Positions 4,736 through 39,668 of a DNA stretch of 64,000 bases are shown piece by piece; within the stretch, counting starts at the first letter, position 1; every line of letters begins with the position of its first letter. The stretch comes from Hemiscyllium ocellatum (lineage: Eukaryota). The translations under genes and the position numbers were made by a program. Location of the stretch: positions 24,428,001 to 24,492,000 of the forward strand of contig NC_083428.1 in the NCBI RefSeq assembly GCF_020745735.1, in the 5' to 3' direction. Under the pieces are notes generated by a model. The model did not search any database. It was not told the DNA's origin and worked only from the letters and a program-made list of their open reading frames with translations.

Positions 4736-4742
4736 AAGTTGA

Positions 4743-5030: not shown

Positions 5031-5885
5031 CCTAGACAAACTGTCATGTATTTCCTAGTCACTTGGCCTTGAGAATTTGAACCCTTGCATCTTGCTTTAC
5101 TGGCAATAAGTATTAAGGCCATAATAGATTAATGCCAAAAATGGATTGACTTATTTTTGTTCATATTATGCAGATGGGCATAAAGCAGTCTCTATACTTT
5201 ACAAGAAAATAGTTTATCATTTATAAGCACCACTTATAGATAAGGCCAACCTCACTTTAAACAAACGTATCGATAAAGTTGTTTGGGACAATACCATGTG
5301 GGTTTCACAGTGACATAAAAATCAGTCAATTCAGATTGATAAGAAGATCTCTTATATAATATTAACCGTTAATTCAACACTGTTGTCAGGAGTTTATTAA
5401 GTGCAATAAAAGATGTGTAAAATCATTACACTATATTTATCAAAAACAGTCAGTAGTATAATTGCAAATGTCATCATCCAAAATGTGGGTTATATTTGGA
5501 TTCAGTACTTGTATTGGAGCCAAATATTGAAGGAAGGGTGTGGGAAGCAGTGCTCATAGGTAAGGATAATGTCAACAATTTGCTAAGCTTGATATGTCAA
5601 TGTGAGAGATTGAGGACTGAGAGCCCAGACATATGTGCATTTGCTGAGATTCAGGACAGCTAGAGTTCTCTTAACATTTTCTAACGGAATTTTAGCATAC
5701 CCAGTGAGAGAAGCAGTGATGAAGCTAAAAAATGTGTTGCTGGAAAAGCGCAGCATGTCAGCCAGCATCCAAGGAGAAGGAGAATCGACGTTTCGGGCAC
5801 AAGCACTTCTTCAGGAGAGAGGCAATGAGGCAAGAAAACAATAGTGAATCAAAGCACAATATGAAACCCAACAAGAAATACTCAC

Positions 5886-5954
5886 ACAAGGGACTTTGTT
5901 TTCATTCTGAACATTAATTTGTCGTAAAAGTCGTCGTTCATAATCTTGATCCAT
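5886..5954 (-). CDS. FZR1: Fizzy-related protein 1 (Cdh1, APC/C co-activator), first coding exon; gene continues beyond the window start
   Basis: Translates MDQDYERRLLRQINVQNENKVPC, matching the FZR1 N-terminus; GTGAGT donor at 5885-5880; acceptor TTTCAG puts exon start at 5999; head-to-head with DOHH as in human. Confidence 0.92.
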
Positions 5955-8494
5955 GGTAAGAGGAGTTGAATGTGATTAAGGCTGAATCAGGAGTCAGCAC
6001 TGAAATAAGGCAAGAATCAATAATCAGTAAATGAAATCTTCAATACTGTGCAACTTTTACACTAGTAGTCAGCATGATAAATATACAAAACAGCAATTCA
6101 TTGATTGTAATTCAAATAAATTTTGTCTGAATGTTTGAATCAGAACTTTGACAGACTAACTTTTTGGAAGTGTCAGCACAAAATGAGTGAGACTGCGTAT
6201 CTTTTTTATTATCGCAGTGAGAACAGAAGAGAGATCAGATAACATAACCAAAACTCACTCTCCAAGGTCCAAACTAGATTAAACACGCTCCCAATGAAAC
6301 CTGTCTTTGCTTTTTTTGTTGTTTTTGAAGAAAGACGTTATGATGCACTATCAAGCTGACCACTTAGAACCATTGGCTTGCACTTGTAACATAACTATGC
6401 ATTCAAAGGCATAGTGCAGGGGAGTGGTGGAAATCTAGAGAGAAACAAATATTGTGCTATGGAGGAGAGATTTGGGCACAACAGTTGGTACAAGGAATCT
6501 ATACCATTGCCCACTCAATGCCAGGAAAGGTCGGTATTGAGAAACCTTTTTCAAAAAGCTGGGATTAAAGCAACTTGCAAGGATATTGGCTAGAACTTAA
6601 AGCTTGATTTTCCATAAAGGTGTAAAATAAACTGTTTGCACTATTGGCATCACTTATTACGGTCACAGAGTGAGATATGGCAACAAAAGAAAAACAATAT
6701 TCAGACAAACCATAATTCATAATTTGTTATCTTGCACTTCACAACAAAATTCCTGAATTTATCAAAAGATCATTCAATGTACTTGTTAAGTGCAGAAGAT
6801 AAAGCTGTACATTATGGTAGAACCCAGTTATTTTCAATTCACATACGAATCCAAGATTGAATACCAGAAGAATCTTCTTCATTGCTGCATTCCAGTCCAC
6901 ACACCAACCTAGCCTAAATAATTCAGTACAATACCAAGGAATTGTTCGACTTTCCAGCTTTCTCATGAGATGTTAAATCTGTATGTTAAACTTTCTTTTG
7001 TTCAAGAGATCCCAGCACTGCGTAATTTAAGACCTACAGAGTTCTTCTGATATCCTAACTAAAATATATCCTTAACGCTGTAAGTTCCTGTAAGATTCAA
7101 TGAAATGTTCTATGTTTTTTGCAATTGTATCTACTTCATTAAAAATGACAGTGTTTTAAAAAATAAATTTGATGGTTTTTGATACTTTGGGAAATATGAT
7201 GCTAAAAATTAGATCCTCTATATTGGAATCTTGTACAATTAAAATGGTACCAATAATTTTTAAAAACCAAAACTGCAGGCCTAGCCTGGCCATGCTCCAA
7301 TCTGTCTAACCGCAAGAATGAACCATAAAATCTTCAAACACTGAACTCACCTCCCCATACCCTATACTGAAAGCTCCTTTTCAACACATCTAACCTTTCT
7401 GCTCCATTCTGCTTTTCCAATTACTGCTTAGCCATGTCTTTCATTGAAGACCATCACTTAGTCTGCTTGAACTATCTTACCTTTCCTTCTGTTTTTGAAA
7501 GGCCAATTAAAACACACTTCTGATTTATAATCAGAAACATTTTTAAATGTTTGAATTCCACAAAAGGCAATATATTATTTTATGAATTCAAATGGAATTC
7601 AAGGTTTGTCTCATTTGTGAGAAGACTATTCAATATGCAATGCAATAACAAACATCTATTCTGCAATGTAGTTGTTTCTCTGGAATAAATCCCCCCGCCA
7701 TTCTTGCGCACAAATCATTTGAGAAAAAATATTTCTATTCCTAAAAATAACATACAACATTTCATAATGTGGATATTAGTGATATTGACGGAAAGCTGCA
7801 TTAAACTCAAATAAAACATATAACAAGGAACAACTGGAAGGTAACAATGAACTAGCACAGCAAATGTAATTCATAACTCGACAAAAATAATTTCATTTTG
7901 AACTAACTGATAAAGCGGTTTCTATTTGATATTATATGATACAGCGTTTGAGTATCAAGCTTAAGCTTTTGGAAACATGAAGTGTCTTATCTAAAGATAC
8001 ATTGCATGCTAATACACAACTGTGATACTATTACAACTTGTAGAGCAACAACACTAACTGAAATTTGAGCTGCTTTGAAAGTTACTCAAGGTAATGCATC
8101 TGTATTACTGTTCAGCCCACTTAGGGATGCAGTGTGTTTCTCTCCTACAGGAAAAAAAATAGGTTGATGGTCATTGATTGTTGATTAATCATAGCAATCT
8201 GTTATGATTCTAACATATAATCACTACAATAGAAGACAAATTAAATGGCTTTAGCAATTTCTATTTTCCTGCTTCATTGGATTATAACAGGTGTAAAATG
8301 TTGATATTCTTAAAGATAGCTATTGGATAAAACAAGCTTGAGTTCTGAATTTACAAAACAAACTACATCCTTTTAAATGGGAAATACATTAGGAGAGACC
8401 CTCTGAGTTGCATAACAGTTAAGTGTTATTGAAAAAATAGATGATATCAACCCGAACAAAGGAAAAGTTAGAATTAGGCATAGTTACACTGAAT

Positions 8495-13560: not shown

Positions 13561-14569
13561 TACTTGACAGTATCATTTCATGTCCACTTTTAGCTCTAAT
13601 CCCCTTTTTATGTTCCATCTTGCTACTCCTATACTCCTCTAGGGCTTGTGCCATTTGAGCCCTTGGTACCTGTCCCAGCCCTACCTTTTTCTCTTAACCC
13701 AATGCTATATATCCCTCAATATCTAGTGTCTAGCTTTCACCACCTGCATTTTGCCTATTGCATGAAGACTGACACAGTATTAACTTTCATTCATCAGTTC
13801 TTAACAAGTGCTGTATTACAAGCTGTTTTGGGAGTTTTTTTTCAGACTACCAACATCCGCAGTTTAATTTTTCATCTTTAAAATAAGGCCTCATCTGCAT
13901 ATTAAAAAAGCAACACTACTAATGGCAGCACATTCCCTTACCAATGATGATATCTTAATGCCACATAACTAAGTTCACGATCAGTAGTCCCAATACTGGC
14001 GATGGGGAAAAGCACAACCTGATTGTTGCATGTGCGTATAATAGTGGCACTGTAAGATTAGTTACTTTAATGTGGATGTGAAAAATGGTTGGGTCATCTT
14101 AAACACATGAATGAATCTAAGTTACCTCTGACATGTTTTAAAGAATTTAAAACATGAGAGACAGAGAGCACACAGAAGCATTGGCCAAGACACCAAAGCA
14201 AAACACACTCTCATGTTTGCAGTGAAGCTACATTATTCTTCATCAAGGACAACCCCAAATCCAGCAAGAAGTGCCTTGCACAACAGCTTGAAGAAAAAAA
14301 GGACTGAGATCAGCAGGATCGAGAAGAAACAAAGCCTCGAGCACTGACCATGAAGGAATGTGGCCATCGGGCACCTTCATGGAAAGTCAGCAACCGGCGT
14401 ATTCCCCTCCACGCCCACAGTAATCCTCACTCCCCCTCCACCATACCTGCAATGGAAGGTGAGAGAGGGCAACCTCCACAAAACGGCACGATGAAAACTC
14501 GCAGTCACGTAACCATCCGTGTCACTGATTCCCGGTTGAAACATCCACCTCTCGGATCCCCCTCCTCAC

Positions 14570-14640
14570 CCAGCAGCTCCGACCGTGCACCCCTCTGCAG
14601 CCCGGACAATATGGCGACCGCACTTCCGGCGCCGGGCGAC
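14570..14640 (-). other. FZR1: Probable non-coding first exon of FZR1 (TSS approximate)
   Basis: Minus-strand donor CTGG|GTGAGG at 14570/14569 at the edge of the CpG island; YY1-like CGCCATATT and ETS CCGGAAGT nearby. Confidence 0.6.
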
Positions 14641-14931
14641 CGTTACCATTGTGACGTCACGCGAATTCAAACCTCCACAGGAAGTGCGCTGTTGCCACGG
14701 CGACGCGGCGAGTCTCCATGGTTACGCGATCACAATAAACGATATTGGCAAAATAATATATAATAGGCTTTCCGGCGCGCGGATCCCGCGGCCCGTATTG
14801 GTATGTCCAGCTGTAATGAAGGGAGTGTGGTTCCGATCCGGAATGCCGAGGTGGGAGTGGGCTTTTCGGGGCTAGCGGGAGGGGGTGGGGGCCATTCGGA
14901 CGTGAACACTTCCCAGGTCAGTCAGTGAAAC

Positions 14932-15093
14932 ATGGCGGAGGAGACGGTGGTGCCCATGATGTTTTTATTCCTCTTTCTGTTAATGAAACGCCGCGCTGAG
15001 TTTGAGGGTGCCAGCATCGAGAGGAGGAACGACGCCCAGCGGAGGCTGAGGTTGAGGCAGTATTTCCAACAGCGGCAGAGGAAAATGATTTTG
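14932..15093 (+). CDS. Harbinger-transposase-derived (HARBI1/ALP1-like) gene, coding exon 1
   Basis: Good Kozak AAACATGG; 54 codons MAEETVVPMMFLFLFLLMKRRAEFEGASIERRNDAQRRLRLRQYFQQRQRKMIL; phase-0 donor TTG|GTACGG in frame with exon 2. Confidence 0.75.
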
Positions 15094-16094
15094 GTACGGG
15101 GGAAGGTTTGAGGGGAGGGAGGGAGGTGGTGGGATTGAAAACAGAACGAAATGTGCGCTGCGACACAAAGGGCAACAGGGGAAAAAGAAGTTGGACTGGC
15201 GACCGCGCGTTTAATCCCAACGTTTAGAGCTCTTGTCTAGAGGACTCGAAAAAAATAAACAGAAGAGGAGCTATTTAAAGCGGCGATGTTTGTCCACACT
15301 CACTCGTCCACAACTTGAATCCCGACAGGAGTTTGTAATCTCACTCAGACCTGCAATATCCGAACAAATGGTGTAAAGTGAATTTGGCGGGCAGATGAAT
15401 TTTGCATTTTTGGATTCCGTTACTTAAGAGAGGAGAATCTCAACTGAAATTATTGATGAGATTAAAATACCGTAAGGTATGAAACACATTTAGCCCTACT
15501 TTTGACATATTCCGCAATACCCGATAAAATTGAGATTTAATCGTTGATTCCAGATCAGGAGGTTTTTTTTGTTAAGACGGCGGGCTGTTTGGAGAACGTT
15601 AAGAGTACCTCATCAGAAAGATATCATGGTAGCTTTTGAATAGGAATTCGATAATCATTCGAAATACAAACAAAATATGTGGGGTAAACAGAGGAGTGGG
15701 ATTAGGGCTTCTTGAGCTGTAAAATTGCAACATTCTTTCTCAAATGTCTTGTTTGCGTTTATTCAGAAACTGCATGGACGGTGGCGAAAGAGTGGTTATA
15801 TAAACCAACTAGCTATTCTCAATTACGATAGGATTTATTGCATGCTGACTGTAATGCTTGTTTAGTTGGGATGCTCTAAACTTCGGTTACTTTTGTTCCG
15901 TAAACTTGTTAAAACGTAGATAATTTAGTGTTGCAGTTGGCTTTGATCTGATAACTAATTCTGACATGTGAATGCACTAATTTCCCTTCATCAGTGCAGA
16001 CGTTCAGATCTAAAACCTAATGTGAATTTTAGCATTTGTGGAAAGGAACTGAAAAGGAGTCTATTTTTCCAAACAGAAAAACGTGATTTGAAAC

Positions 16095-16915
16095 TTGTCA
16101 AGTCATGAAGATGTACAGCACAGAAACAGACCCTTGGGTCCAACTCTTCCCTGCCAAGCAGCTATCCTAAATTACTCTAGTTCCATTTGCTAGCGCTTGG
16201 TCACATTCCTCCAAACCCTTTCTATTCATATACATATCCAGCTGCCTTTTAAATGTTGTGATTTTCCCAGTATCCACAACTTCCTCATACCTTTCATGCA
16301 CCAGCTTCTACGTGAAAAAGTTGTCTCGGGTCCCTTTTAGATCTTTCCCCTCTCATCTAAACCTATGCCCTCTAGTTTGTGGGTGGCACGATGGCACAGT
16401 GGTAAGCACTGTTGCCTCACAGCGCCTGAGACCTGGGTTCAATTCCCGACTCAGGCGACTGACTGTGTGGAGTTTGCACGTTCTCCCCATGTCTGCGTGG
16501 ATTTCTTCCGGGTGCTCCGGTTTCCTCCTACAGTCCAAAGATGTGCGGGTCAGGTGAATTGGCCATGCTAAATTGCCCGTAGTGTTAGGTAAGGGGTAAA
16601 TGTAGGGGTATGGGTGGGTGGCGGGTCGGTGTGGACTTGTTGGGCGGAAGGGCCTGTTTCCACACTGTAAGTAATCTAATCTAATCTAGTTCTGGGCTTT
16701 CACACCTTGGGGAAAAGACCTCGTATATTTAGCTTGACCCATGCCCCTCATGATTTTATAAACCTTTATAAGGTCACCCCTGATTCCTGATGAAGGGCTC
16801 TGGCCCGAAACGTCGAATTTCCTGTTCCGTGGATGCTGCCTGACCTGCTGTGCTTTAACCAGCAACACATTTTCAGCTCTGATCTCCAGCATCTGCAGAC
16901 CTCACTTTTTACACC
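16095..16915. mobile_element. CR1 3' fragment (minus) with nested HE1-type SINE (16382-16687, plus) and Penelope terminal repeat (16782-16912)
   Basis: RGDLIKVYKIMRG remnant; SINE with (CTAAT)n tail; terminal repeat as at 310-521. Confidence 0.8.
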
Positions 16916-17791
16916 CCTTAGCCTAATTAGACAACTAATTGTCAAAATTCTTTTTTGGATTGGAAAGTAATTGTGAATTTTGAAATAGTTAAACCCTAAT
17001 ATTTGGACCCTAAGCAAAATTCCAAAGGCCTATTTCGTATGCCAAGCTAATGTATTTTTCTTTTAATCGTATTTGTGTTTTGATTGAGACACTTGAGATG
17101 GCGCCTGTGCCCGTATGAAATGACCATCCATACCTGATTGTAAATGTCTGAATGGAAGTTAATTAAATAGAATTCAGGTTAATTCTGTCTAAATTTGTTT
17201 TTCTAAATTTGAGAAAAAACAAATTTACATTCTATTGCAAGCTTAAGACCTTACTGAAAAGTATATACTTTGTGAGATACTGTTATGCTTCCTAAAGTGG
17301 TAAAATCTTATTATGTTCCAGTAGCCCCTTTCTTTCATTCCAACACACTTTGCTGTAGTCAATACTTCTTTAAAAAAAACCCTACAAAATGTGGGTTCAT
17401 CCATTCTGTGAATACACACACTCCTTGCTATGTTGTTTTATTATTTGTTCTGGTGCATACAAGTTGCTTTAAATTAGCTTCGCTTGTTTCCCCTAGGTAT
17501 AATAATTTAAAACCTCATTTCTAGTGACTTAAATAGGAAGTTAGTAAGATATTCATCCAAAAGAAATTTTTGGCAACAGTTGTGTTATCATAGCTGAAGT
17601 GTGTGTTTCTTTGTAAATGTCTGTCATGTTCATACATATTACAATACCATCATATATCAGGAAGCAGGTGCTGGCTATAACAACCTATGTACTTTATACT
17701 ATAACTTTTAAATAAAGATAGCTCAAGTTCAGCAGTTTCACTGGATAACTAAGCAGTGCAATTGTAATAATACTTTCTTTGATATTTGCAG

Positions 17792-18907
17792 ATGGTGATG
17801 GCACGCGGAGGTTGTAGGTGTAACTGTCGTACAAGAATCTGGTGTAAGCCAAGAACTTCAGACTGGTGGGAACGTGTGGTTATGAAGGACTTTCAGCCAA
17901 ATGATTGGCTGGAAAATTTCAGAATGTCTAAGGAAACATTTTTTCATATTTGTAATAAGCTGAAACCCATGGTTTCTCGTCGAAACACTCACCTTCGTCC
18001 TGCACTCCCCTTGGAAAAGAGAGTTGCAGTAGCATTTTGGCGACTTGCTACTAATGTAGAATATAGAATTATTAGTCATTTGTTTGGGATAGGTCGATCA
18101 ACTGTCTGTAAATGCGTAAGAGAGGTTTGTCATGCCATTGTGTCTCTCTTAAAGCCTCTGTATCTCAAAATGCCCTCTAATCAAGAATATGAAACAATAG
18201 CTCAGATGTTTGGTCGAAAATGGGACTTTCCCCAATGTGTAGGTGCCATTGATAGTTGCCATATACCTATCATTGCCCCTCCACAGTATCACAAAGATTA
18301 CCTAAACAAACAAGGGTGGCATTCAGTTGTGTTACAAGGTGTAGTTGATGACAGTGGGAAATTTTGGGATGTATGTACTGGATTTTCTGGGAGTTCTCTT
18401 GATACAAAAAATCTGAGGAATTCTGCTCTATGGAGACTGGCTACTGAAGGAAGGCTGTTCCCTGACTGCTCAAGAGATATTCTGAGAACACCAGTGAAAT
18501 ACCTGCTGATAGGCAGTTCTTCATATCCACTACAGGAGTGGCTCCTGAAGCCATATTCTGAAACAGCAAAACTAACACAGCATCAACTTGTGTTTAACTA
18601 CAGGTTAAGCCAAGCTCACACTGTGATAGACGATGCATTTGGACGACTCAGAGCTCGTTGGCAATGTCTTCTCAAGAGGAATGACTGTAGCCTTGAACTT
18701 ATTCCAACAATGATCACTGCCTGTTGCATTCTTCATAATATCTGTGAAAAGCATAATGATAGTTTTAATAATGACTGGAGGGGTGTTCTTAGGCAGGAGG
18801 AATTTCCTCAGCCAAAGCAAGTAATGTCAGATAATACAGTCGATAGGCAAGCCGAAGAAATTCGTCAGGTATTGTCTACATACTTTATGAGTCAAGGGGA
18901 GAGCTAA
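17792..18907 (+). CDS. Harbinger-transposase-derived (HARBI1/ALP1-like, DDE_Tnp_4-type) gene, coding exon 2; total 425 aa
   Basis: Acceptor TTTGCAG|ATG; motifs NFRMSKETF, LATNVEYRIISHLFGIGRSTV (HTH), FPQCVGAIDSCHIPI, YPLQEWLLKPY, FNYRLSQA, AFGRLRARWQCL, CCILHNICE; AATAAA at 19024-19029. Confidence 0.93.
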   Translation: MVMARGGCRCNCRTRIWCKPRTSDWWERVVMKDFQPNDWLENFRMSKETFFHICNKLKPMVSRRNTHLRPALPLEKRVAVAFWRLATNVEYRIISHLFGIGRSTVCKCVREVCHAIVSLLKPLYLKMPSNQEYETIAQMFGRKWDFPQCVGAIDSCHIPIIAPPQYHKDYLNKQGWHSVVLQGVVDDSGKFWDVCTGFSGSSLDTKNLRNSALWRLATEGRLFPDCSRDILRTPVKYLLIGSSSYPLQEWLLKPYSETAKLTQHQLVFNYRLSQAHTVIDDAFGRLRARWQCLLKRNDCSLELIPTMITACCILHNICEKHNDSFNNDWRGVLRQEEFPQPKQVMSDNTVDRQAEEIRQVLSTYFMSQGES

Positions 18908-20181
18908 CTGTTAGCTTGAGTTTGTCACAATAGCATTTATGTAAATAATGTAAGATATATTTTCAATATGATTTTCATCATTGGTTAGGAATGCCTTGGT
19001 ATTGTATACTGATATGCTGTAGCAATAAACCTGTAATGCTATTTCCTTTTTTATTGTAATCATGGTAAAATCTATTGTGATTTTTATAGTACTACTGTCA
19101 GCCTTCAGTAAGTTGGTTAAATGTAGAGCTGCTGAAGTCTGAATAGCTGTTGAGGTCTTGAAGAATATATTTTGTTTGTGTACTCGGTTCAAGGATTTTC
19201 AGTCAAGCTCAGTTTAGCAACTATTTTCTCATACTTGAAACCAGTTTGTACAATTATTTGCAAAAGCCTTTAAACAGAAACTTAAAAATCAAAAGATAAT
19301 GATGAACCTTTGTCCGGATAAAGTGAAAAATCAAAAATGCATAAGTAAATACCAAAGAAAAATATACTTAGCACAAAGGTTAGTTTAATACCTCAGATTA
19401 AAATCTTTAAAAGCCATCATTAAATTACAGCAAAAGACCATATTAGAAAGACAAGACAGAAAAATTTGCAGAAAAGAATGAAAGACAAAAGTTTTCAGGA
19501 AGTAGATTGTTGAGAGTAATCATCAAATTTCCAACTGTAACAAATATTTTTAATTTAAAAAGTGTTTGCCAAGTTTGTGTATACTCATCTAATTACATGT
19601 GGATGATTTACCCTGACAGCATGTACTGAATTTAACAAGTAAGAGGTTAGTTTTATTGTGCAAAAATGCACCCAGGTAAAAATGTAAAAATATGTCCTGA
19701 ATCTCACAACTTGCAAGAAAATGTATACACGTCAACCAAACATACAAAATAGAAAATACAGAACAAATGAGATTAAATTGGCTAAGTTAAAGATCAATAA
19801 GAATAAAATCATAAGAATTCACTGGTTCTGAATGGCTATCTGCTCTGGCTGTAGCTGTTCAATGACTTTGTTTCATGGCCAGCAGTTTCAGGTTGTACAT
19901 GATGTCTTTTCTTTCTGAAAGTGCTGCTGTGGAAGGTGAAGTCTTTTGAAAGTTCTCTGCCTGCTTGCAGGAAGACAAATGCAATCACACTTTGCAGATG
20001 GGGTTCAAAGCTTAAATGGAAGGTTGGGGAGAGAGAGATGGCATCTGTTCACTCTAGCAGATGATGTGATGTCTGTCCAACTCCCAAATTCAGCAACCAC
20101 AAAAAAGTTGCAATGTCACCTCTATCCACATTTTATTTTTAGACATTCTGTATACAGCCAAGATAATGTTTTTTGTAATTA

Positions 20182-24729: not shown

Positions 24730-24867
24730 TTCACCCGGGATCCCCCCGCCCACTCTACCCCCATGGATTGGCCCAATGGGCCCCAGAGGATGATGGGTGA
24801 TTTGGAGTCACGTGGTGGCTGGTGTCGGTCATCCGGGTGTGAAAGGAGTCGCGGCGCCCGGTTCACA
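24730..24867 (+). promoter_or_regulatory. DOHH: DOHH CpG-island promoter / 5' leader
   Basis: GC box 24744-24751, opposed CCAAT boxes ATTGG 24767-24771 and CCAAT 24773-24777, E-box CACGTG 24809-24814; CpG-rich to ~25190. Confidence 0.6.
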
Positions 24868-25141
24868 ATGTGGGACGACAAGGCGGTGGAGGCGATCGGG
24901 CGGATCTTGGTGGATGTGTCGAGGCCGCTGAAGGAGCGTTTCCGTGCGCTTTTCACCCTCCGGAACCTGGGCGGCCCGCTGGCTATCGAGTGGATCTCCA
25001 GGGGCTTCGGGGACGAGTCGGCGCTGCTGAAGCACGAGTTGGCCTACTGCCTGGGCCAGATGCAGGACCAGCGGGCTATCCCCATCCTGACCCGGGTACT
25101 ACAGGACCACAGCCAGGAGCCGATGGTCAGACACGAAGCAG
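24868..25141 (+). CDS. DOHH: Deoxyhypusine hydroxylase, coding exon 1
   Basis: MWDDKAVEAIGRILVD...RFRALFTLRNLGG...SALLKHELAYCLGQMQD...PMVRHEA G; HE iron-binding motifs; 274 nt, GT donor at 25142. Confidence 0.96.
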
Positions 25142-25669
25142 GTGATGCATCGGCGCCCGACCGACCTTAAAAGCGCCGAGAGGCTCGAAATAGACCATTT
25201 AAAAGCTGTGTCTACGATTCTGATATCAAGCCTAAATACTTGTAGTTGCAGGAAATGTGGAATTTTATTTTAAAAGGCGCTGGCAAAGAACTAGATGATG
25301 TTTATTAGAATTTAGAACAAGGCCAGCCAATAACCCACCTAATTTCCAGAGACCAGCTGTCATTTAAAAAAATACTTTTATTGAGCAGTCATATTAAAGG
25401 GGCAGTAAACATGACTTTTTCCCAATTCTGTTCCAATTATTCCAAGCTTAATTCAAACATCGTCTGTGAGCGAAACAGCGTTGCTGTTAAGTAACTAATA
25501 AAATCATCAATTTAAAAATGAACCCTGCAGGAAAATGCTGCAAATATGGCTTCATGTAGATCTCTATCCCTTAGCTACGTCGATGTCTGCAGTCATTCAG
25601 CCAGTTCACAATCTGCTGCAACAGAAAAATGTCAGATCCATTTAATTGCATTTTATGCTGTTATTTCAG

Positions 25670-25746
25670 GTGAAGCACTGGGAGCTATTGGAAAACCAGA
25701 GGTCCTTGAAACATTGAGGTATTACTCACATGATCCAATAATAGAA
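25670..25746 (+). CDS. DOHH: DOHH coding exon 2
   Basis: TTTCAG|(G)EALGAIGKPEVLETLRYYSHDPIIE|GTAAGG; 77 nt. Confidence 0.95.
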
Positions 25747-25919
25747 GTAAGGATAGTTTAATTTCATTTCTTATGAATTAGTTAAAATGATCTTGAGACA
25801 CAATCATCTCTGTCTTATTTCTATCTCTGTATCATTACCCAACAGCATCCCTACCTCTTATCTGCAGCTGAAACTGCATCCTTGCTCCCCTTGATCCTGA
25901 CTTGACTATTTCACTCACT

Positions 25920-27250
25920 CGTAGAGTCACAGAGACATACAATGCATACAGACCCTTCCATCCAATTTGTCCATGCTGACTATATATTCTAAATTATTCA
26001 AGTTCCAGTTGCCAGCACTTGATCCATATCCCTCCAAACCCTTCCTATTGATATACCCATCCAGATGTTTTTTAAATGGCGTAATTGTGCCAGCCTCCTC
26101 TACTTCCTCTGACAACTCATTTCATGCACACAGTACCTGTTGCATAAAAAAGTTACCCCGGTCCCTTTTTAAATCTTTCCTCTGACACTCTAAACTTACA
26201 CTCTCTAGTTCTGGACATCCCCAACCCAGGGAAAAGGCCTTGTCTATTTACCCTATCCATGCCCCTCATGATTTTTTAAACCTCTATAAGGTCACCCCTC
26301 AGTCTCCAATGCTCCAGGGAAAAAGAACCCCAGCCTATTCAGCCTCTCCAACCCTGGCACCATCCTTGTAAAATATTTCTGAACTCTCTCAAGTTTTACA
26401 ACATCCTCCCTATAGGAGGGGGACCAGAATTGTATGCAATATTCCAAAAGTGGTCAAACCAATGTCCTTGCAGCCTCAATATGATCTTCCCACTCCTGTA
26501 GTCAATACTCTGACCAATAAAGGAAAGCATACCAAACGCTGCCTTCACTATCCTATCTACCTGCAACTCTACTTTCAAGGAACTATGATCCTGCACTTTA
26601 AGGTCTCTTTGTTCAGCAACACTCCCTAGGACCTTGCTATTAAGCGTATAAGTCCTGCCAAGATTTGCTTTCCCAAAATGCATCACCTCCCATTTAGATA
26701 AATTAAACTCCATCTGCCACTACTCAGCTCATTGGCCCATCTGATCAAGATCCCATTGTAATCTGAGGTAACCTTCTTCGCTGTCCACTACACCTCCAAT
26801 TTTGGTGTCATCTGCAAACTTACTAAGTTTGCCTCCTATGTTCATATCCAAATCATTTATATAAATGATGAAAAGTAGTGGCCCCAGCACTGATCCTTGT
26901 GGCACTCCACTGGTCACAGGTGTCCAGTTTGAAAAGCAACTCTCCACCACCCACTGTCTTCTGCCTTTGAGTCAGTTCTGTATCCAAATGGCTAGTTCTC
27001 CTTGTATTCCATGAGATCTAACCTTGCTAACCAGTCTCCCATGGGGAATCTTGTCGAATGCCTTGCTGAAGTCCCTATAGATCACGTCTACCACTCTGCC
27101 TTCGTCAATCCTCTTTGTTACTTTTTTAAAAAACTCTACGTAGTTTGTGAGAAATAATTTCTCATGCACGAAGCCATGTTGACTATTTCCTAATCAGTCC
27201 TTGCTTTTCTAAATACATGTAAATCCTGTCCCTCAGGATTCCCACCATAA
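25920..27250 (-). mobile_element. CR1 LINE 3' portion in DOHH intron 2
   Basis: [43 protein letters not shown] motifs with frameshifts. Confidence 0.92.
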
Positions 27251-29649
27251 ACATCAGTCTCATCTGGTGAGCCAGTGTTTTGATCTTTTTCCCCAAAGTT
27301 CCAAGACAATGCAACAACCTAAAAAAACAGTAATTACTGTTCTTGGAATTTGAAGAAATCATCTCCAACACCTAAGATACCTCAAAATAAGAGAAGCTCT
27401 TGTAGCCACAATTTTTTTCCTGTCCTCCATCTTCATTCCTGTTTACCTTTTTGCATTCTACTCTTCATAAGCTTGATGCTATCCAAAACTGACTGTGGCC
27501 TAACCTGCATAAAGTTCTGTATCCCCTTCACCCTATTTTTCGTTTTTAAAAAAAGTGCAATGATCTAGCTGACGTTTATGATAATTTAGAACTAATCTGC
27601 CATTAACCTAGTTAATTTTGAGGGCCAAGCCGTCGTATTAAAGAGACAGAAGAGCTGGAATGTTTTCAAATATTAAGCTTAGTTTAAAGCATCATCTGTG
27701 AGAGAAACAGTATGGCCATTAAATTGAAAAGTTGGCTCCCAATAAGTGAAGTAAAATCCTCTTCTCCCCTTTGGTCCCTTCAACCAACAAGACATAAAAC
27801 GCTAAACCTTTTCTCTTTACACCTCTCATTTCTTCTTTAAAAGACTGTTTGCTTTTGCTCATCTATTCTCATGTCTCATTGTGCAACTGTAAAATTTATG
27901 GTGTTCGTGTACAGTATTTTGGAGTGTTTTATGTTTAAAGCACTATATATATGCAAGTTGTTACACTCATTTTTCTCTCCTTTTACTGGATTTCCAAAAC
28001 TCGCTTCAAGATTGTTTTAAATTATAAATTTCCCTCTAATATTTTTCCTTTTCGTGACATGTTTTTCTCTGCTCCTATTAGGCCTTTGTTCAGTTCTGGC
28101 AGAGGGTACATGGAGTAAAAATCTGATGTGACATGGGTTTGAGGTAGGAGTATTCATTGGACATGAGACTCATTTGGTTCTCTACAAAAACTGCCAACCA
28201 CTGTTCTAGATTACATCTATTGGAATTTAGAACTGGACCAGCCGGTAACCCAGTTAATTTCTTGTAGAAACTAGAAAAGAGGGGTAGAACACTCCTCGTA
28301 TTTCCCCAATGCATCTCCAGCTCTTAAGCTTTGAAAGATTGGTCACCTCTGATCTTGAAATGTCAGAAAATGCTAACAAAAGCAAACCAAGTCCAGGATT
28401 TATCATGAAGGCAAATGGAAGCCTTTCAACAACAAAAGCAAACAATTAAGAGATGAAAAATAATTGGATGAACATCTAATTTGTTAGAAGTTGGAAATCC
28501 AGAGTGGGAGAAACTAACAGTGTTATATCAGTTTATATTAATCCATTGCTTTCATTGCTTTCGAGCCATTATAATGAAAAGGTTAAGTTGGAATTAAATA
28601 ATCTTTATCTAAAATATTCTCCTGGTTTCCCTATTTATCACTCCCCTTAAAAAGTATTATTTTGCTTAATCAATTCTACTTATAGGTGTACAACAGGCTT
28701 CCGAAGTGTGACAAAGATCTGCTAGTCTAACAGCTTTCTCCTTTATGTTTGGGATTATGCTGAAAGTTATTGATTTCTGTATCTATCTTCAGGTTACTAC
28801 AGTGCATAATTTCCAAATTACTGTGTTCAGATTGGATGAGCCAAGGTAATGAAGGAACCTTCACAGTTGCCTTCAGACTGGAGTGAAAAATTCAAGTCTC
28901 CATTCTCTCTTCAGAATGCTAAATGATAACAGTAGTGTACAGATTTCAGTTTCCAGAAAAATCTTCATGATGTAATTCGATTTCAAATGTGTTTGTATCT
29001 GGTCTAAATGTGAAATGCAGTTACATCTCCAGAATTTGGGAAAGTTGTTACTAGCCAAGGCAATGGTAGTAAGTTTCTTTAACAGCAATGTGGCTTTCAA
29101 AAATAAGTCTTAATTGGAAGATTTCGACAAGTTCTTTTGCAGTCCTATCAGGCAGTAAGGAATTGACATTTCTGTTCAACACCACAAGGTTTGGCAGATA
29201 ACTTTTAAATATAACAGCAAAGAGGTGCAGTTGTTTTATACAACATTGGTCAGATTGGATACCAAGTCTGCTTTGCTTTTCCCATTTTTTATGGACAAGA
29301 TCATATCCCCTCAAAACATGTCAAGGACCCTAATTTTTTTCTTATTTTAAGGACAAGTGCCAGGTGTTGCATTCCTGATGCAATTTGATTGGTCATGCTA
29401 TCAGGCTTGAAGCAAAACACATTTTATTCATATACTATAGTTAAAATGCAGACAAAATAAAAATATTGGCTTAACTGTTACCCTATTGAAATATTTTAAA
29501 GTAATAAACTGCTTATTAACTGTTCTCATATAGTAACATCCATAAGCATACCCCTGGCAAAGGCAAATTCAATAAAATAGATGGTCTCGCATGCAATATT
29601 AGCAGCAGCAAGAGAACTTTGGTCTTTGCTACAGCTAAAACCTTAAGGA

Positions 29650-29992
29650 TGGATCAGTGGTTAGCACTGTTGCCTCGATGCCAGGGACACAGGTTCGATT
29701 TTAGCCTTGGGTGACTCTTTTGTGTGGAGTTTGCAAATTCTGTCCATATCTTTGTGGTTTTCTGCAGGCTGCCCTGGCTTCCTGTCACAATCCAAAGATG
29801 TGCAGGATAGGTGGATTGTCCGTGCTAAATTGCCTGTAGTTTCAAGGGATGTGCAGGCTGCGTGGATTAGCCATGGGAAATGCAGGTTTACAGAAGTAAG
29901 GGGTGGGTTTGGATGGGATGCTATTGAGAGAGTCAATGTGGATTTGATCGCCAAATGGCCTGCTTCCACCTGGAGGGGATTCTGTGATTCTA
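29650..29992 (+). mobile_element. HE1-related SINE inside an unclassified repeat-like region (~29320-30220)
   Basis: CAGTGGTTAGCACTGTTGCCTC head and typical body. Confidence 0.7.
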
Positions 29993-32231
29993 AGAGGTGT
30001 AGCAGTTGAGGTTGTGAAAGCTGCTACTGAAAGCTAAAACTAAAATCCTGTTTCTATGGGAGGTTGGACCACCCATTCAGGCTGCTTCTGTTGTTCCAAT
30101 GTTTATTAAAAGGTCCCTGTTTACTTTGTTGACTTGAAGCAGACTGATTGTCACCTCTGTCTCAACCTCTCTTTGCTTAAAAAAAGGACAACCTGCATCT
30201 TTTATAGCCATAGTATTGTCCCATATATTTAAAATGTTTATGGTGTTACTTTCCCTTTTGGAAAGTGTGCTGATTATCATTCCCAATGACTCCTGGGGTC
30301 ACCTCAAAAGCTTTAATCAAAGCAAGCAAAATACTTGATTTATGTGTTTGGAGTCAAGTTAACAAGAACAGTTGCTTATTAAAAATAAGCAAATTCTAAT
30401 TTCAGGTAAAGCTATGAAATATCAATGTATGGCTCTACTAGTTAAAACTTTTATCCCATTTTACAACCCTGACACATTTATACAGACAGAAAAATCCTTA
30501 GTTTTGTGAATGATGGGAAGCATTTCAATAGCACCAGTTCATTGTTTGTTAAAATATACATTTTGGCATATCAGGACTTTCTATTCTTTGGATTTCCTTT
30601 CTCCAGGTTCTTTTACTTCTTTATAGAAGACACAGGCTGATTGTAACACTAATTACAAAGTCTTTTAGTGTTGGGGAAAATAAATCTTTTGCTGAATTGT
30701 TTAAAACAAAATAGTCAGGAGAGGAGACGTTGAGCAATTAACCAGCTTTATCATGACCATGGGGAATATGTCTTTGTTCGAAGAAGTCTCCGACACATTC
30801 CGATGAAGTGCAGGATATTAAAGGTTATATAGTATGTTCCAAACCCACTGCCCATTAATTACGCAACTTTGGGGCAGTCGTAAGGTCTACCTACATTGTC
30901 CAGACCTACATTTCGTAATGTCTACAAAACTGAATGTTATCTTATATCGCAGGTTTAGCTAGGCAGGATTATGAGCAAGCTAAGGCAACTTTCCCAGCAT
31001 TTGCTCCAGTCGCGTTATATCTGGACATTGTTGGTAAGCAGCTGATAAGCAGATACAATAGGTTGTTGCAAAGAGAAGAATGGCTCCATGCAAAGAGAGG
31101 AATTTGTTTATCAGGTATCGACACAGCTGCAAGGCCAACCATCTCCTGCACGCATGGGAAAAAAGACTTTTAGCAGGGCAGGCACTGAATGTAAAACAAA
31201 ATGTTCTCCAGGCTTTATTATGTGACAAAAATGGCTGCCATGATCCTAACAATTCTTGCACACTTAGTTACTGCCTACAGCAGCCTCAGGTTTTTTTTTG
31301 AGGGATACACACCACCTGCCCTTCCAGTGGTCCAAAGACACTGTGTCAAGCTGTTCAAGAACCAATCCGATGTTGTCAAATTGATGACCTTTGGCAAGCA
31401 CAATTGGTCATGATTGAAGGAACCAATCAAACCAGTTGTTGGCTAAATGGTAGTCATATGTGCACACACTCCGATGCTAGTCTCTCAAACATCAATTTCC
31501 ATTGCTTGAACAAAGCAGCAGTTTAAGCACCACACAATGAGTTTCAGTAACTTCTTATATGTCCAGCAATTTTTACCATAGACTTAAAACGGTTCTTTTT
31601 TTCCATCTTAGTCCACAACTAAAAACATAAGAAATAAACTAACTGCCTTAACAATAGGAAAATTGAAGTTTAGATTCAGAAGGAGAAAATAGAATGAATG
31701 CAGACAATTAAGATGAGATTTGTGAAAACAAAGGCTGTGTTCACCACATAGAGTGGATTAGACCAGTTAACAGGTGTATTGTCATCAGCATTGAATTCAG
31801 TTGTTGAACCCATAGGATCTCAATCTTCAGGTAATGTTGGAGGCTGAATGGAAAGTGAAAAAAAATGAGTTTGTGTGTGAGCAAGGATACACAGCATGCA
31901 GAATACCCATGTAAATGTATATTCAATTTTCTGTCTAATTTTGAATTTTAAACAGTTTGTTTTTATTTTAGGAATGAGCAACTACAAAATCATGGCCTCC
32001 AACATAATAGTTAAATATTAGGTTAACTGTTAACTACCCACTGCAGAAAATTATTGTCCAAACAGTAATATACTCAATCACTCATGAGGTTCTGGTGAAG
32101 CCAAGAACACACAGCGGTTTATGTTGGATTTTGGAGGCTCTGGTTTTTGATCCATTTTGGTAACTTCACAGTCTGGTTAGGTGGCTCTCCTATACTTTAT
32201 TTTAATGGTTTATTTGTATTAAAATGTTTAG

Positions 32232-32466
32232 GTTGCTGAAACTTGCCAGCTGGCAGTTAAACGAATTGAATGGCTTCAGAACAATAAAGACCAGAATGAA
32301 AGCCAATACTGTTCAATTGATCCTGCTCCCCCAGCTCTGGAGAAAGATCCTAAGAAATTAAGAGAAGCTCTCCTAGATGAATCCTTGCCCTTGTTTGACA
32401 GATACAGAGCAATGTTTGCCCTGCGGAATATTGGAAGTAAAGAAGCAGTCTTGGCATTAGGAGATG
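32232..32466 (+). CDS. DOHH: DOHH coding exon 3
   Basis: TTTAG|VAETCQLAVKRIEWLQ...YCSIDPAPPA...LLDESLPLFDRYRAMFALRNIGSKEAVLALGD G|GTATGT; 235 nt. Confidence 0.96.
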
Positions 32467-32651
32467 GTATGTATTTTATTGAGACTTTTACATTAGGCAA
32501 TTGATTACAGTAGAATTTGATTTTGGCACATCATAGTAAAATTGTGAATTGTTTTTGAGCTTTTAAATCACAATGTTGTAAGTTCAAGCCTCTTTCTTTA
32601 TTAATATGTGAGATGTAGCTGATGCTGTTTAGGATAGAGAGCCAGCCCTTT

Positions 32652-32945
32652 AGGGCGGCACGGTGGCACAGTGGTTAGCACTGCTGCCTCACAGCGCCAG
32701 GGACCTGGGTTCAATTCCTGCCTCAGGCGACTGACTGTGTGGAGTTTGCACGTTCTCCCCGTGTCTGCGTGGGTTTCCTCCGGGTGCTCCGGTTTCCTCC
32801 CACAGTCCAAAGATATGCAGGTTAGGTGAATTGTCCATAGTGTTAGGTAAAGGGGTAAATGTAGGGGTATGGGTGGGTTGCGCTTCGGCGGGTCGGTGTG
32901 GACTTGTTGGGCCGAAGGGCCTGTTTCCACACTGTAAGTAATCTA
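32652..32945 (+). mobile_element. HE1-type SINE
   Basis: Near-consensus copy. Confidence 0.88.
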
Positions 32946-34034
32946 AAAAATGTGGGTGAGCTACTATCTTGAACTACTGTGGACTTTGGTTTGTAGGTAC
33001 GTCCACAGTGCATTTGAAAGGAAGTTCCAGGATTTTGAATCGATGATCGTGAAAGAGCAGCAATATATGCCTTGGCAGACACCTTGGAGGTGATGGTATT
33101 CCCACCAATCTGTTCTTCTCCTTCCAGGTGGTGATGGTTGTGGATTAGGGCAGTGTCAAAGGAGTCTGGATTTGTTGCTCCAATGTATCTTATAGAAGTA
33201 CACAGTGCTCCCACTGTGCTTTGGTACTGGACGGAATGAATGTTGAGGGTACTGAATAGAGTGCCATGCTGCTTGGTCCTGGGTAGTGTTCAGCTGCTTC
33301 AGTGTTGTTCAAGTTGCTCTCCCCCAGATTAGGAAAGACAGTTGCATTGCACGCAAGTTTCATGCCTTGCTGATAATAGACAGGCAGTGGTGTGAATTAC
33401 CCAGAGGATTCCTTGCCTTTTACCCACTCTTGTAACCATAGCATTTATATCACAGACACAGTTCAATTTCTGGTAACTTTCCATGATGTTTGTGGATGAT
33501 TCAGTGATGGTAATACCATTGGAAGGACCCTTCAAGTTTCACTTGCATATGCTAGGTGAAGCATATATTAATACTCAGTGTACTTTATTGCAGATAAGAG
33601 AAAAAGGCGTGCACAATGCCTGTTCCATCTCAACAAAATAGATGACAGCCCTGACCAATGGGAGTCATCTTGCCTGGTTTAAAATTTAAACCAGCCCGGA
33701 ATGTTAACTGATTCAGTATTAATGAGCGCATTCTCCATGGCAACAGATCTACAATGAGTTCACTTGCCAACCAATCACCAGTCTTCTCTCATGCAGTCCG
33801 AGTGTTGGTTTCTGGCTTGAATTTATATTCTTGTGAATTGTCGTGATGAATGTGAGTCAAAAATCTTAAACCATGCTCAAGTTCTCTACTAACGAATAAT
33901 TATATATCAGGAAGTTGGCTTATAGCTTAATCAGTAGATTTTCCAGTCTTAATTTTGCCAGATCTTTTCGAAGTATTTGCTATTTTGATTTGCATTTGGG
34001 TGAAGATATTTCATCTTATGTATATTTCCCTCAG

Positions 34035-34372
34035 GTTTGCAGTGTGAAAGTGCCTTGTTTCGTCACGAAATTGGCTATGTCTTTGGCCAAATGCAGCATG
34101 ATGCCAGTATTCCACAACTTATAACTGCATTGAAAAAACTGGATGAAAATCCCATGGTCCGTCATGAGTGCGCAGAAGCTTTAGGATCGATTGCCAAAGA
34201 ACCATGTGTGGAAATATTGAAAGAATATCTACATGATGAAGAACGTGTTGTGAAGGAGAGTTGTGAGGTAGCACTGGACATGCTTGAATACGAAAATAGT
34301 CCAGAGTTTCAGTATGCAGATACATTGATTAAATTGCAAAAAACGGAGTCCGGGAATAGAACATTGCCTTAA
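34035..34372 (+). CDS. DOHH: DOHH coding exon 4 (terminal); spliced CDS 924 nt, 307 aa
   Basis: CCCTCAG|(G)[20 protein letters not shown]...[16 protein letters not shown]...[25 protein letters not shown]...TAA; candidate AATAAA at 35007-35012. Confidence 0.96.

Positions 34373-39416: not shown

Positions 39417-39668
<252 letters not shown>

What the first reader, a model, noticed from the sequence alone, without database searches (positions are those of the whole stretch)
14932..19029. Intact, spliced Harbinger-transposase gene between FZR1 and DOHH: candidate domesticated transposase
Seen: a two-exon ORF (14932-15093 + 17792-18907, phase 0, 425 aa) with all the HARBI1/PIF-Harbinger motifs, a CpG-island first exon and a poly(A) signal. 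Its 2.7-kb intron has accumulated CR1, SINE and Penelope insertions while the CDS stayed open. I could not find flanking TIRs. Known: Harbinger transposases have been domesticated before (HARBI1 in vertebrates, ALP1 in plants). As I recall, human has no such gene between FZR1 and DOHH, and canonical HARBI1 lies at another locus. Inference: a separate, old, host-retained domestication, possibly lost in mammals.
Basis: partly seen in the sequence, partly recalled or inferred. Interest (0 to 1): 0.78.

Follow-up and report, generated by a model that had tools for sequence, protein, structure and literature searches.

The report
Ancient domesticated Harbinger transposase gene
This is a real, single-copy host gene that jawed vertebrates made from a Harbinger transposon more than 400 million years ago and have kept between FZR1 and DOHH from sharks to birds; it is not HARBI1, no paper found here describes it, and in sharks its cutting site is disabled.

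Summary
Two coding exons (14932-15093 and 17792-18907, GT/AG, phase 0) encode 425 aa. This is 100% identical to an uncharacterized RefSeq model of the epaulette shark Hemiscyllium ocellatum. Pfam finds DDE_Tnp_4 and HTH_Tnp_4 domains.

- **Synteny:** the order FZR1(-), this gene(+), DOHH(+) recurs in horn shark, gar and quail.
- **Intron:** the phase-0 intron sits at the same place in shark, gar, zebrafish and quail.
- **Tree:** orthologues form one clade (100/99 support) that mirrors the species tree: chimaera, ray, sharks, coelacanth, ray-finned fish, amphibians, turtles, crocodilians, birds.
- **Absences:** hagfish and squamate look-alikes fall outside the clade, and no mammalian protein appeared.
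- **Selection:** shark versus ray-like cDNA gives dN/dS 0.13 (0.02 in the HTH).
- **Not HARBI1:** true HARBI1 is only 21-24% identical.
- **Not a mobile copy:** no TIRs, and the CDS is unique in the window.

The DDE triad is D-S-D or D-S-H in the nine chondrichthyan proteins compared. It was lost at least five times in the clade, so the conserved role is probably non-catalytic: DNA or chromatin binding, perhaps with a Myb-like partner. That last step is inference.

I found no paper describing this gene. The scan has noted a different shark-specific domesticated Harbinger gene elsewhere in this genome. I rate this a new member of a known kind.

The parts
14200..15250 (.). CpG island covering the 5' end and first exon. 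Probably a promoter shared head-to-head with FZR1 (inferred).
   Evidence: CpG o/e is 0.89 and GC 0.54, against 0.28 and 0.40 for the window. In gar the annotated FZR1 gene overlaps the start of the orthologue on the other strand.
14932..15093 (+). Coding exon 1: 54 aa, predicted to form one long N-terminal helix.
   Evidence: ATG start and GT donor at 15094. The region is conserved across gnathostome orthologues. Homology to ray-like cDNA L003 stops at the donor. dN/dS is 0.15. AlphaFold predicts a helix over residues 6-59.
15094..17791 (+). Single phase-0 intron of 2698 bp.
   Evidence: GTACGG...TTGCAG. The same position and phase are found in gar, zebrafish and quail.
16101..16912 (.). Nested interspersed repeats inside the intron. 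A roughly 300-bp SINE-like unit at 16381-16687 is inserted into another repeat.
   Evidence: blastn of the intron against the window finds up to 10 other copies at 66-93% identity. ORFs here have no Pfam domain.
17792..18907 (+). Coding exon 2: 371 aa plus the TAA stop. It encodes the whole transposase-derived core.
   Evidence: Open frame, Pfam domains, 82% nucleotide identity to cDNA L003 starting exactly at the acceptor, AlphaFold mean pLDDT 89.
18002..18154 (+). HTH_Tnp_4 DNA-binding helix-turn-helix, the most constrained part of the protein.
   Evidence: Pfam PF13613 over residues 71-121 of exon 2. dN/dS is 0.02.
18248..18739 (+). DDE_Tnp_4 RNase-H-like core with an altered triad: D208 (18251-18253), S296 (18515-18517), D334 (18629-18631).
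   Evidence: Pfam PF13359 at 3e-29. Codons were verified. The triad columns were aligned against DDE-intact relatives.
19024..19029 (+). AATAAA poly(A) signal, 117 nt after the stop codon. Its use is not verified.
   Evidence: Sequence read.
5880..5963 (-). Flanking gene: a coding exon of FZR1 near its 5' end.
   Evidence: tblastn of gar and quail FZR1-locus ORFs gives 82-84% identity. Those loci carry WD40_CDC20-Fz genes.
24865..34348 (+). Flanking gene: DOHH, with exons at 24865-25146, 25660-25755, 32232-32471 and 34013-34348.
   Evidence: tblastn of gar and quail DOHH-locus ORFs gives 66-72% identity. Those genes carry HEAT_2.

Best explanation
This is a host gene derived from the transposase of a PIF/Harbinger transposon. 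It was immobilised between FZR1 and DOHH before cartilaginous and bony vertebrates split, more than about 420-450 million years ago, and has been inherited vertically as one gene since. Teleosts carry a second clade of copies in some lineages; I read these as whole-genome-duplication copies, which is inference. The gene is transcribed from a CpG-island promoter and spliced once. The product has a long N-terminal helix (exon 1), a short disordered linker, two helix-turn-helix modules and an RNase-H-like core (exon 2). In the nine chondrichthyan proteins compared, two of the three catalytic carboxylates are replaced: D-S-D, or D-S-H in horn shark. The shark protein therefore cannot work as a canonical DDE nuclease or transposase. 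What is shown: orthology, synteny, conserved gene structure, purifying selection that is strongest on the HTH, and repeated loss of the triad. What is inferred: the selected role is sequence- or chromatin-directed DNA binding and scaffolding. The N-terminal helix may serve as the interface for a Myb/SANT-like partner, as in Harbinger transposase with its Myb-like protein, HARBI1 with NAIF1, and plant ALP1 with ALP2.
For: The gene model is identical to a RefSeq model. The order FZR1(-), gene(+), DOHH(+) is found in Heterodontus, Lepisosteus and Coturnix, and a tinamou annotation fuses the gene with DOHH. A phase-0 intron lies at the homologous codon in four distant species. The careful ML tree gives one clade at 100/99 support whose internal order follows the species tree, from chimaera, ray and sharks through to birds, with short branches compared with transposon relatives. 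dN/dS is 0.13 (interval 0.09-0.19), 0.02 in the HTH and 0.15 in exon 1. cDNA contigs show the same donor and acceptor in use in a ray-like elasmobranch, one contig carrying a template-switch oligo at its 5' end, and in zebrafish. There are no TIRs and the CDS is unique in the window. The triad is D-S-D or D-S-H in the nine chondrichthyan proteins compared. At least five changes of triad state are needed inside the clade, while most transposon-like relatives keep DDE. The AlphaFold model is confident, and its best reviewed matches are ALP1-like, ALP1 and HARBI1.
Against: There are no expression data from this shark itself. In the ray-like cDNAs a 175-nt cassette exon with a stop codon sits between exons 1 and 2, so that isoform cannot make the full 425-aa protein. 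The DDE triad is fully retained in coelacanth, sturgeon, gar, bowfin, turtles, a crocodilian and birds, so a catalytic role in those lineages is not excluded and the function may not be uniform. No partner protein or DNA target has been identified. The known Myb-like-derived genes (NAIF1, MSANTD1-4) persist in mammals (PMC9392472), so their distribution does not match this gene's. Deep dS values are saturated, so selection was measured on one pair only.
Confidence: 0.85

Rival explanations
1. It is an ordinary, possibly recently active, Harbinger transposon copy that happens to lie between FZR1 and DOHH.
For: The domain set (DDE_Tnp_4, HTH_Tnp_4) is that of a Harbinger transposase. The superfamily is very large, with 22,356 related representatives.
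Against: The locus and the intron are the same in shark, gar and quail. The tree matches the species tree. dN/dS is 0.13. There are no TIRs. The triad is broken. The CDS is unique in the window.
Confidence: 0.01
2. It is the shark orthologue of canonical HARBI1, as some database names suggest.
For: Several orthologues are auto-named 'putative nuclease HARBI1'. The fold is the same, with TM 0.77-0.78.
Against: Identity to reviewed HARBI1 proteins of six species, zebrafish included, is only 21-24%. Those proteins are 347-349 aa, against 425 aa here. Zebrafish has a separate 437-aa orthologue of this gene at 55-57% identity. HARBI1 is reported in mammals (PMC9392472), whereas this clade has no mammalian member in the searches.
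Confidence: 0.02
3. It is a domesticated gene whose selected function is still nucleolytic, as a host DNA nuclease or recombinase. On this reading the shark D-S-D site is a rewired but active centre.
For: DDE is strictly retained in many bony-vertebrate orthologues over hundreds of millions of years. The replacement S is invariant and the third position is D in eight of nine chondrichthyans (H in horn shark). E-to-D at the third position occurs in active DDD transposases (general knowledge).
Against: The second carboxylate is replaced by Ser in every chondrichthyan protein examined here. The first is replaced by G, A, T or S in most teleosts, caecilians and a frog. At least five independent disruptions with continued constraint argue that catalysis is dispensable.
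Confidence: 0.1
4. It is an annotated but decaying or non-functional ORF: transcribed, but not translated into a useful protein.
For: The ray-like cDNA isoform carries a premature stop between exons 1 and 2. No function is known.
Against: An open 425-aa frame is kept in chimaera, ray, sharks and bony vertebrates. dN/dS is 0.13 overall and 0.02 in the HTH.
Confidence: 0.02

Closest known systems
[quoted passage not shown] 2008, as cited in PMC9392472)
   Same: Both derive from a PIF/Harbinger transposase and have the same fold (TM 0.77-0.78). Both are old, single-copy host genes dated to the base of jawed vertebrates.
   Different: Identity is only 21-24%. This protein is 425 aa rather than 347-349 and has an extra N-terminal helix encoded by a separate exon. 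It lies at a different locus (FZR1-DOHH). No mammalian member was found. The triad is broken in sharks and many other lineages, whereas HARBI1 is described as keeping the transposase motifs (my recollection, not tested here).
Arabidopsis ALP1 / ALP1-like (domesticated Harbinger transposases, accessory to PRC2; PMC4671723, PMC7282668)
   Same: They are the best reviewed structural matches (25-27% identity, TM 0.81). Both are domesticated Harbinger transposases with a degenerate catalytic triad; the plant ALP1-like rows also lack DDE. NCBI names many orthologues 'ALP1-like'.
   Different: The domestications are independent: plant sequences group far from this clade. No link to Polycomb or to a Myb-like partner is shown for this gene.
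Five domesticated Harbinger ORFs of Anolis (Novick et al. 2011, PMC3014272) and the squamate genes seen here (Podarcis L009)
   Same: They are transposase-derived ORFs without TIRs in a non-mammalian vertebrate. The triad is fully lost (GGG or GSG).
   Different: The squamate gene examined is intronless, lies between a PQ-loop gene and a LAMP-like gene, and falls outside the FZR1-DOHH clade. The link between the Podarcis gene and the Anolis ORFs is my guess from their sizes.
Shark-specific domesticated Harbinger gene next to S1PR1 (earlier finding s1-147190, same genome)
   Same: It is the same kind of event in the same genome, also reported with a disabled catalytic site.
   Different: It lies on a different piece of DNA and is reported as restricted to elasmobranchs. 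The present gene is shared by all jawed-vertebrate classes except mammals and squamates, where it was not found. I did not test that finding.

Membership tests
PIF/Harbinger transposase superfamily (by descent) | DDE_Tnp_4 RNase-H-like domain preceded by HTH_Tnp_4 | tested here: met
   Pfam gives PF13359 at 3e-29 and PF13613 at 2e-6. The fold matches ALP1, HARBI1 and IS5-type transposases.
PIF/Harbinger transposase superfamily (as an active element) | Intact D-D-E catalytic triad | tested here: not met
   The triad reads D208-S296-D334. The same D-S-D pattern, or D-S-H in horn shark, is found in the nine chondrichthyan proteins compared.
PIF/Harbinger transposase superfamily (as an active element) | Terminal inverted repeats and a 3-bp TAA/TTA target duplication | tested here: not met
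   Only weak 15-nt and 24-nt inverted pairs span the gene, and neither lies at a plausible element end.
PIF/Harbinger transposase superfamily (as an active element) | Second ORF for a Myb/SANT-like protein in the same element | tested here: inconclusive
   Ten of the longest ORFs in the intron and both flanks have no Pfam hit. Short or spliced ORFs were not examined.
PIF/Harbinger transposase superfamily (as an active element) | Multiple copies in the genome | not testable with these tools
   The CDS is unique in the 64-kb window, and no second copy outside teleosts appeared in the searches. The rest of the genome could not be searched.
Domesticated transposase gene | Orthologues at the same genomic site in distant taxa | tested here: met
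   FZR1(-), gene(+), DOHH(+) in Heterodontus, Lepisosteus and Coturnix, and in the window. Zebrafish has different neighbours.
Domesticated transposase gene | Gene tree congruent with the species tree, one clade | tested here: met
   The clade has 100/99 support, and internal nodes follow chondrichthyan, tetrapod and actinopterygian relationships. Only the coelacanth placement is off, and that node has weak support at 89/50.
Domesticated transposase gene | Purifying selection on the coding sequence | tested here: met
   dN 0.106, dS 0.81, omega 0.13, bootstrap interval 0.09-0.19. Only one pair was usable because deeper pairs are saturated.
Domesticated transposase gene | Transcription and splicing as a host gene | tested here: met
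   This holds for relatives, not for this shark. The ray-like cDNAs L003 and L004 and the zebrafish cDNAs L006-L008 use the homologous donor and acceptor.
HARBI1 orthologous group | Close sequence kinship to HARBI1 (orthologue-level identity, about 349 aa) | tested here: not met
   Identity to reviewed HARBI1 of rat, mouse, zebrafish, cow, human and Xenopus is 21-24%, and the length is 425 aa.
HARBI1 orthologous group | Presence in mammals | tested here: not met
   No mammalian protein appears among the 120 listed of 342 hits (shark query) or among all 94 hits (turtle query). Genomes were not searched.
ALP1-type non-catalytic chromatin factor | Physical association with a Myb-like partner or a chromatin-modifying complex | not testable with these tools
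   This needs protein interaction data. It is proposed only by analogy (PMC7282668, PMC9392472).

The most novel reading that the evidence does not exclude
This gene is the missing transposase-derived partner of one of the 'orphan' Harbinger Myb-like-derived vertebrate proteins (MSANTD1, MSANTD2, MSANTD4 or NAIF1). [quoted passage not shown] Together the pair would form a DNA-targeted chromatin-regulating complex, as ALP1-ALP2 do in plants, with the catalytic site made redundant. Mammals and squamates would then have lost the transposase half of an ancient co-domesticated pair.
Probability: 0.2. Interest if true: 0.75.

Novelty: new member of a known kind. Interest (0 to 1): 0.6.

Why it matters
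A 2022 study of Harbinger-derived vertebrate genes names HARBI1 as the only transposase-derived one in its catalogue, alongside five Myb-like-derived genes: NAIF1 and MSANTD1-4 (PMC9392472). An earlier paper proposed five further, uncharacterised cases in a lizard (PMC3014272). This locus adds a second transposase-derived gene of comparable age. It was probably overlooked because mammals do not seem to have it. It offers a natural experiment: the same orthologue keeps DDE in birds, turtles, gar and coelacanth, but lost it independently in cartilaginous fishes, most teleosts and several amphibians, all while under constraint. That makes it possible to test whether a domesticated transposase needs its active site. 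It is also a candidate partner for the MSANTD proteins. Zebrafish, medaka, chicken and axolotl all have the gene, so it can be studied experimentally.

Tried and rejected
- **Loci without DNA or on no record:** the coelacanth protein is not on record in the contig index. Heterodontus and Ranitomeya loci came back without DNA, so shark-to-shark dN/dS and frog synteny could not be done.
- **Deep dN/dS:** pairs between shark, gar, quail and zebrafish gave saturated or undefined dS, and YN00 failed. Only the shark versus ray-like pair was used.
- **Zebrafish synteny:** not conserved; the upstream neighbour is an ankyrin-repeat gene.
- **Hagfish:** I considered the Myxine protein (50% identity) as a cyclostome orthologue and rejected it. 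It groups with the zgc:113227 clade at 100/99 support.
- **Squamates:** I considered the 40-41% hits as diverged orthologues and rejected them. They form another clade, and the Podarcis gene is intronless at another locus.
- **Solved structures:** the PDB fold search gave no meaningful match; the best was E 1.8e-3 with TM 0.36.
- **Intron and flank ORFs:** no Pfam domain, so the CR1 and Penelope assignments are unverified and no Myb-like ORF was found.
- **Literature:** searches for HARBI2, HARBI1-like, zgc 113227 and related term sets found no description of this gene.
- **HARBI1 in the tree:** no HARBI1 sequence was available by reference, so HARBI1 is compared by structure-search identity only.
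- **Atlas search:** added nothing beyond the family name.

Full report
**1. Observation**

- Exon 1 (14932-15093) starts with ATG, encodes 54 residues, and is followed by GTACGG.
- Exon 2 (17792-18907) is preceded by a pyrimidine-rich tract ending in TTGCAG. It encodes 371 residues and ends in TAA.
- The join is in phase 0 and gives 425 aa.
- AATAAA lies 117 nt after the stop codon.
- The first exon sits in a CpG island at 14200-15250. CpG observed/expected is 0.89 and GC 0.54, against 0.28 and 0.40 for the window.
- Pfam finds DDE_Tnp_4 (3e-29), Plant_tran and HTH_Tnp_4 in exon 2, and nothing in exon 1.

The joined protein is 100% identical over all 425 residues to RefSeq XP_060702400.1, 'uncharacterized protein LOC132829101 isoform X1' of Hemiscyllium ocellatum. 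The window is therefore epaulette-shark DNA, and NCBI's pipeline reached the same model independently.

The 2698-bp intron contains nested interspersed repeats at 16101-16912. A roughly 300-bp unit at 16381-16687 has about ten other copies in the window and has split an older repeat. No credible terminal inverted repeats flank the gene, and the coding sequence is unique in the window.

**2. Neighbours and synteny**

Translated comparison with the gar and quail loci places an FZR1 coding exon at 5880-5963 on the minus strand. It places four DOHH exons between 24865 and 34348 on the plus strand. The same order, FZR1(-), this gene(+), DOHH(+), is annotated in three other species:
- Heterodontus francisci
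- Lepisosteus oculatus (L001)
- Coturnix japonica (L002)

A tinamou annotation even fuses the gene with DOHH (P0306). Zebrafish has different neighbours.

**3. Gene structure and transcripts**

Fitting the annotated proteins back onto their loci shows a single phase-0 intron at the homologous codon in gar (1730 bp), zebrafish (803 bp) and quail (482 bp), as in the shark.

Zebrafish transcript contigs (L006-L008) carry the uninterrupted 437-aa frame and align to the genome in two blocks.

Two contigs from different sequencing runs of another elasmobranch (L003, L004) are cDNAs; their protein is most like that of the sawfish. L003 begins with a template-switch oligo. Homology to the window stops exactly at the donor (15093/4) and resumes exactly at the acceptor (17791/2). 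Between the two exons these cDNAs carry an extra 175-nt exon with an in-frame stop, and it has no counterpart in the window. That isoform can only encode the 372-aa form that starts near the beginning of exon 2. NCBI also annotates 371-aa 'X2' isoforms in several sharks.

**4. Orthologues and phylogeny**

A search of 5.8 billion proteins gives identities that fall with phylogenetic distance:

| Group | Identity to the shark exon-2 protein |
|---|---|
| Horn shark | 91% |
| Coelacanth | 65% |
| Sturgeon | 63% |
| Bowfin, gar | 61%, 60% |
| Turtles, crocodilian, birds | 51-54% |
| Caecilians | 54-55% |
| Teleosts (clade members listed) | about 45-61% |
| Salamanders | 49-50% |

The 90% cluster of the horn-shark protein contains one 425-aa protein each from chimaera (Callorhinchus, 82% to the window), catsharks, bamboo sharks, whale shark and smooth-hound. 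It also holds shorter or N-terminally divergent models from sawfish (84%) and basking shark.

A careful maximum-likelihood tree of 59 proteins puts all of these in one clade with 100/99 support. Its internal order is (chimaera,(ray,(sharks))), then amphibians, then (turtles,(crocodilian,birds)), then sturgeon, (bowfin, gar), teleosts. Terminal branches are much shorter than those of the transposon-like relatives. Further points from that tree and the related calls:
- A second teleost clade holds second copies in pike, a knifefish and cypriniforms. I read these as whole-genome-duplication copies.
- A very fast-evolving poison-frog protein also belongs to the main clade.
- The hagfish proteins group instead with the teleost zgc:113227 clade.
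- The squamate hits (40-41% identity) form a separate clade. The Podarcis gene is intronless and sits between a PQ-loop gene and a LAMP-like gene.
- No mammalian protein appeared with either a shark or a turtle query.

The domestication therefore predates the split between cartilaginous and bony vertebrates. An origin before the cyclostome split is not supported.

**5. Selection**

Between the window and the ray-like cDNA, exon 2 gives dN 0.106 and dS 0.81. Omega is 0.13, with a codon-bootstrap 95% interval of 0.09-0.19. By region:

| Region | dN/dS |
|---|---|
| HTH_Tnp_4 | 0.02 |
| DDE core | 0.13 |
| C-terminal tail | 0.24 |
| Exon 1 | 0.15 |

Deeper pairs are saturated.

**6. The catalytic site**

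Aligned with DDE-intact relatives, the shark protein reads D208, S296, D334 (codons at 18251, 18515 and 18629). All nine chondrichthyan proteins compared, including chimaera and sawfish, have D-S-D, except horn shark with D-S-H. The change therefore predates the chimaera-elasmobranch split, and the replacement at the second position has not varied since.

The state of the triad elsewhere in the clade:

| Lineage | Triad |
|---|---|
| Coelacanth, sturgeon, bowfin, gar, tarpon, eels, axolotl, turtles, gharial, birds | D-D-E |
| Otocephalan teleosts | G/A/S-D-D |
| Euteleosts | mostly A/T-E-E |
| Caecilians | G-D-E |
| Frog | G-N-E |
| Ribbed newt | D-D-K |

At least five changes of state are needed within the clade. 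This confirms the sequence observation in the scan's separate note on the triad, but I read it as a loss rather than a rewiring.

**7. Structure**

AlphaFold models are confident: exon 2 has mean pLDDT 89 and pTM 0.88, and the full length has pLDDT 85. Exon 1 is predicted as one long helix (residues 6-59), hydrophobic at its start and basic and glutamine-rich afterwards. It is joined by a disordered, cysteine-rich linker (59-75) to the helical DNA-binding modules and the RNase-H-like core.

Among reviewed proteins, the best matches are:
- Arabidopsis ALP1-like and ALP1: 25-27% identity, TM 0.81
- HARBI1 of six vertebrates: 21-24% identity, TM 0.77-0.78
- Bacterial IS5-type transposases, further down the list

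No solved structure is close.

**8. What it is and how it probably works**

Shown:
- It is a vertically inherited, syntenic, intron-bearing, selectively constrained host gene derived from a Harbinger transposase.
- It is distinct from HARBI1.
- It lacks a canonical active site in cartilaginous fishes.

Inferred:
- Constraint is strongest on the HTH, and the triad is dispensable in many lineages. The conserved function is therefore most likely DNA or chromatin binding and scaffolding.
- The conserved N-terminal helix may be a partner interface. PMC9392472, summarising Sinzelle et al. 2008, states that the Harbinger Myb-like protein binds the N-terminal end of the transposase. That helix is also present in the transposon-like relatives.
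- Known precedents are HARBI1-NAIF1 and the plant pairs ALP1-ALP2 and HDP1-HDP2 (PMC9392472, PMC7282668).

The strict retention of DDE in sauropsids and early-branching bony fishes leaves room for a catalytic role there.

**9. Known or new**

PMC9392472 (2022) lists HARBI1 as the only transposase-derived Harbinger gene in its survey of vertebrates. PMC3014272 (2010) proposed five further domesticated ORFs in Anolis, without orthology analysis. The squamate gene I examined is not this one.

Seven literature searches found no description of the FZR1-DOHH gene. Subscription journals are not covered. Databases carry the gene only under automatic names: 'uncharacterized', 'ALP1-like', 'putative nuclease HARBI1'.

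The scan has separately reported a different, shark-restricted domesticated Harbinger gene next to S1PR1 in this genome. I did not test that finding.

Noticed in passing
L003:202-376 and L004:1-157 (ray-like elasmobranch cDNAs): A 175-nt cassette exon with an in-frame stop lies between the homologues of exons 1 and 2, in contigs from two different sequencing runs. It has no match in the window's intron. It may be a lineage-specific poison exon, or a switch to the N-terminally truncated 372-aa isoform.
   Followed up: partly
P0087, P0361, P0109, P0103, P0117 (no window coordinates): Hagfish proteins (Myxine, Eptatretus; triad D-G-E) group at 100/99 support with the teleost 'zgc:113227' proteins (triad D-D-E). 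This may be another old Harbinger-derived vertebrate gene. I found no paper on it.
   Followed up: partly
L009:10001-11383 (Podarcis lilfordi): An intronless 460-aa Harbinger-derived gene lies between a PQ-loop gene and a LAMP-like gene. Varanus, Euleptes and Podarcis copies are very similar to each other, and their triad is fully lost (GGG or GSG). It may be one of the five domesticated ORFs reported for Anolis in PMC3014272 (my guess).
   Followed up: partly
window 16381-16687, 32653-32946, 22682-22992, 4740-5034, 10842-11130 and others: A roughly 300-bp interspersed repeat has at least ten copies in the 64-kb window at 66-87% identity. Translated pieces of it also match repeated sequences in the gar locus L001, which suggests an old, widely shared SINE-like family.
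   Followed up: no
P0293, P0294, P0299, P0123 (teleost second copies): Some teleosts keep a second copy of this gene, which I read as a whole-genome-duplication copy. Most of these retain D-D-E, while the main teleost copy has lost the first aspartate. That is an asymmetric fate of duplicates.
   Followed up: no
L002:10001-10408 (quail) and P0306 (tinamou): Bird annotations look unreliable at the 5' end. Quail has a 135-aa first exon with an arginine- and proline-rich extension that no other species shares. The tinamou model fuses this gene with DOHH.
   Followed up: no
window 39480-39635 (+): A conserved coding exon downstream of DOHH matches quail L002:16310-16642 at 63% identity. It probably belongs to the next syntenic gene and was not identified.
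   Followed up: no
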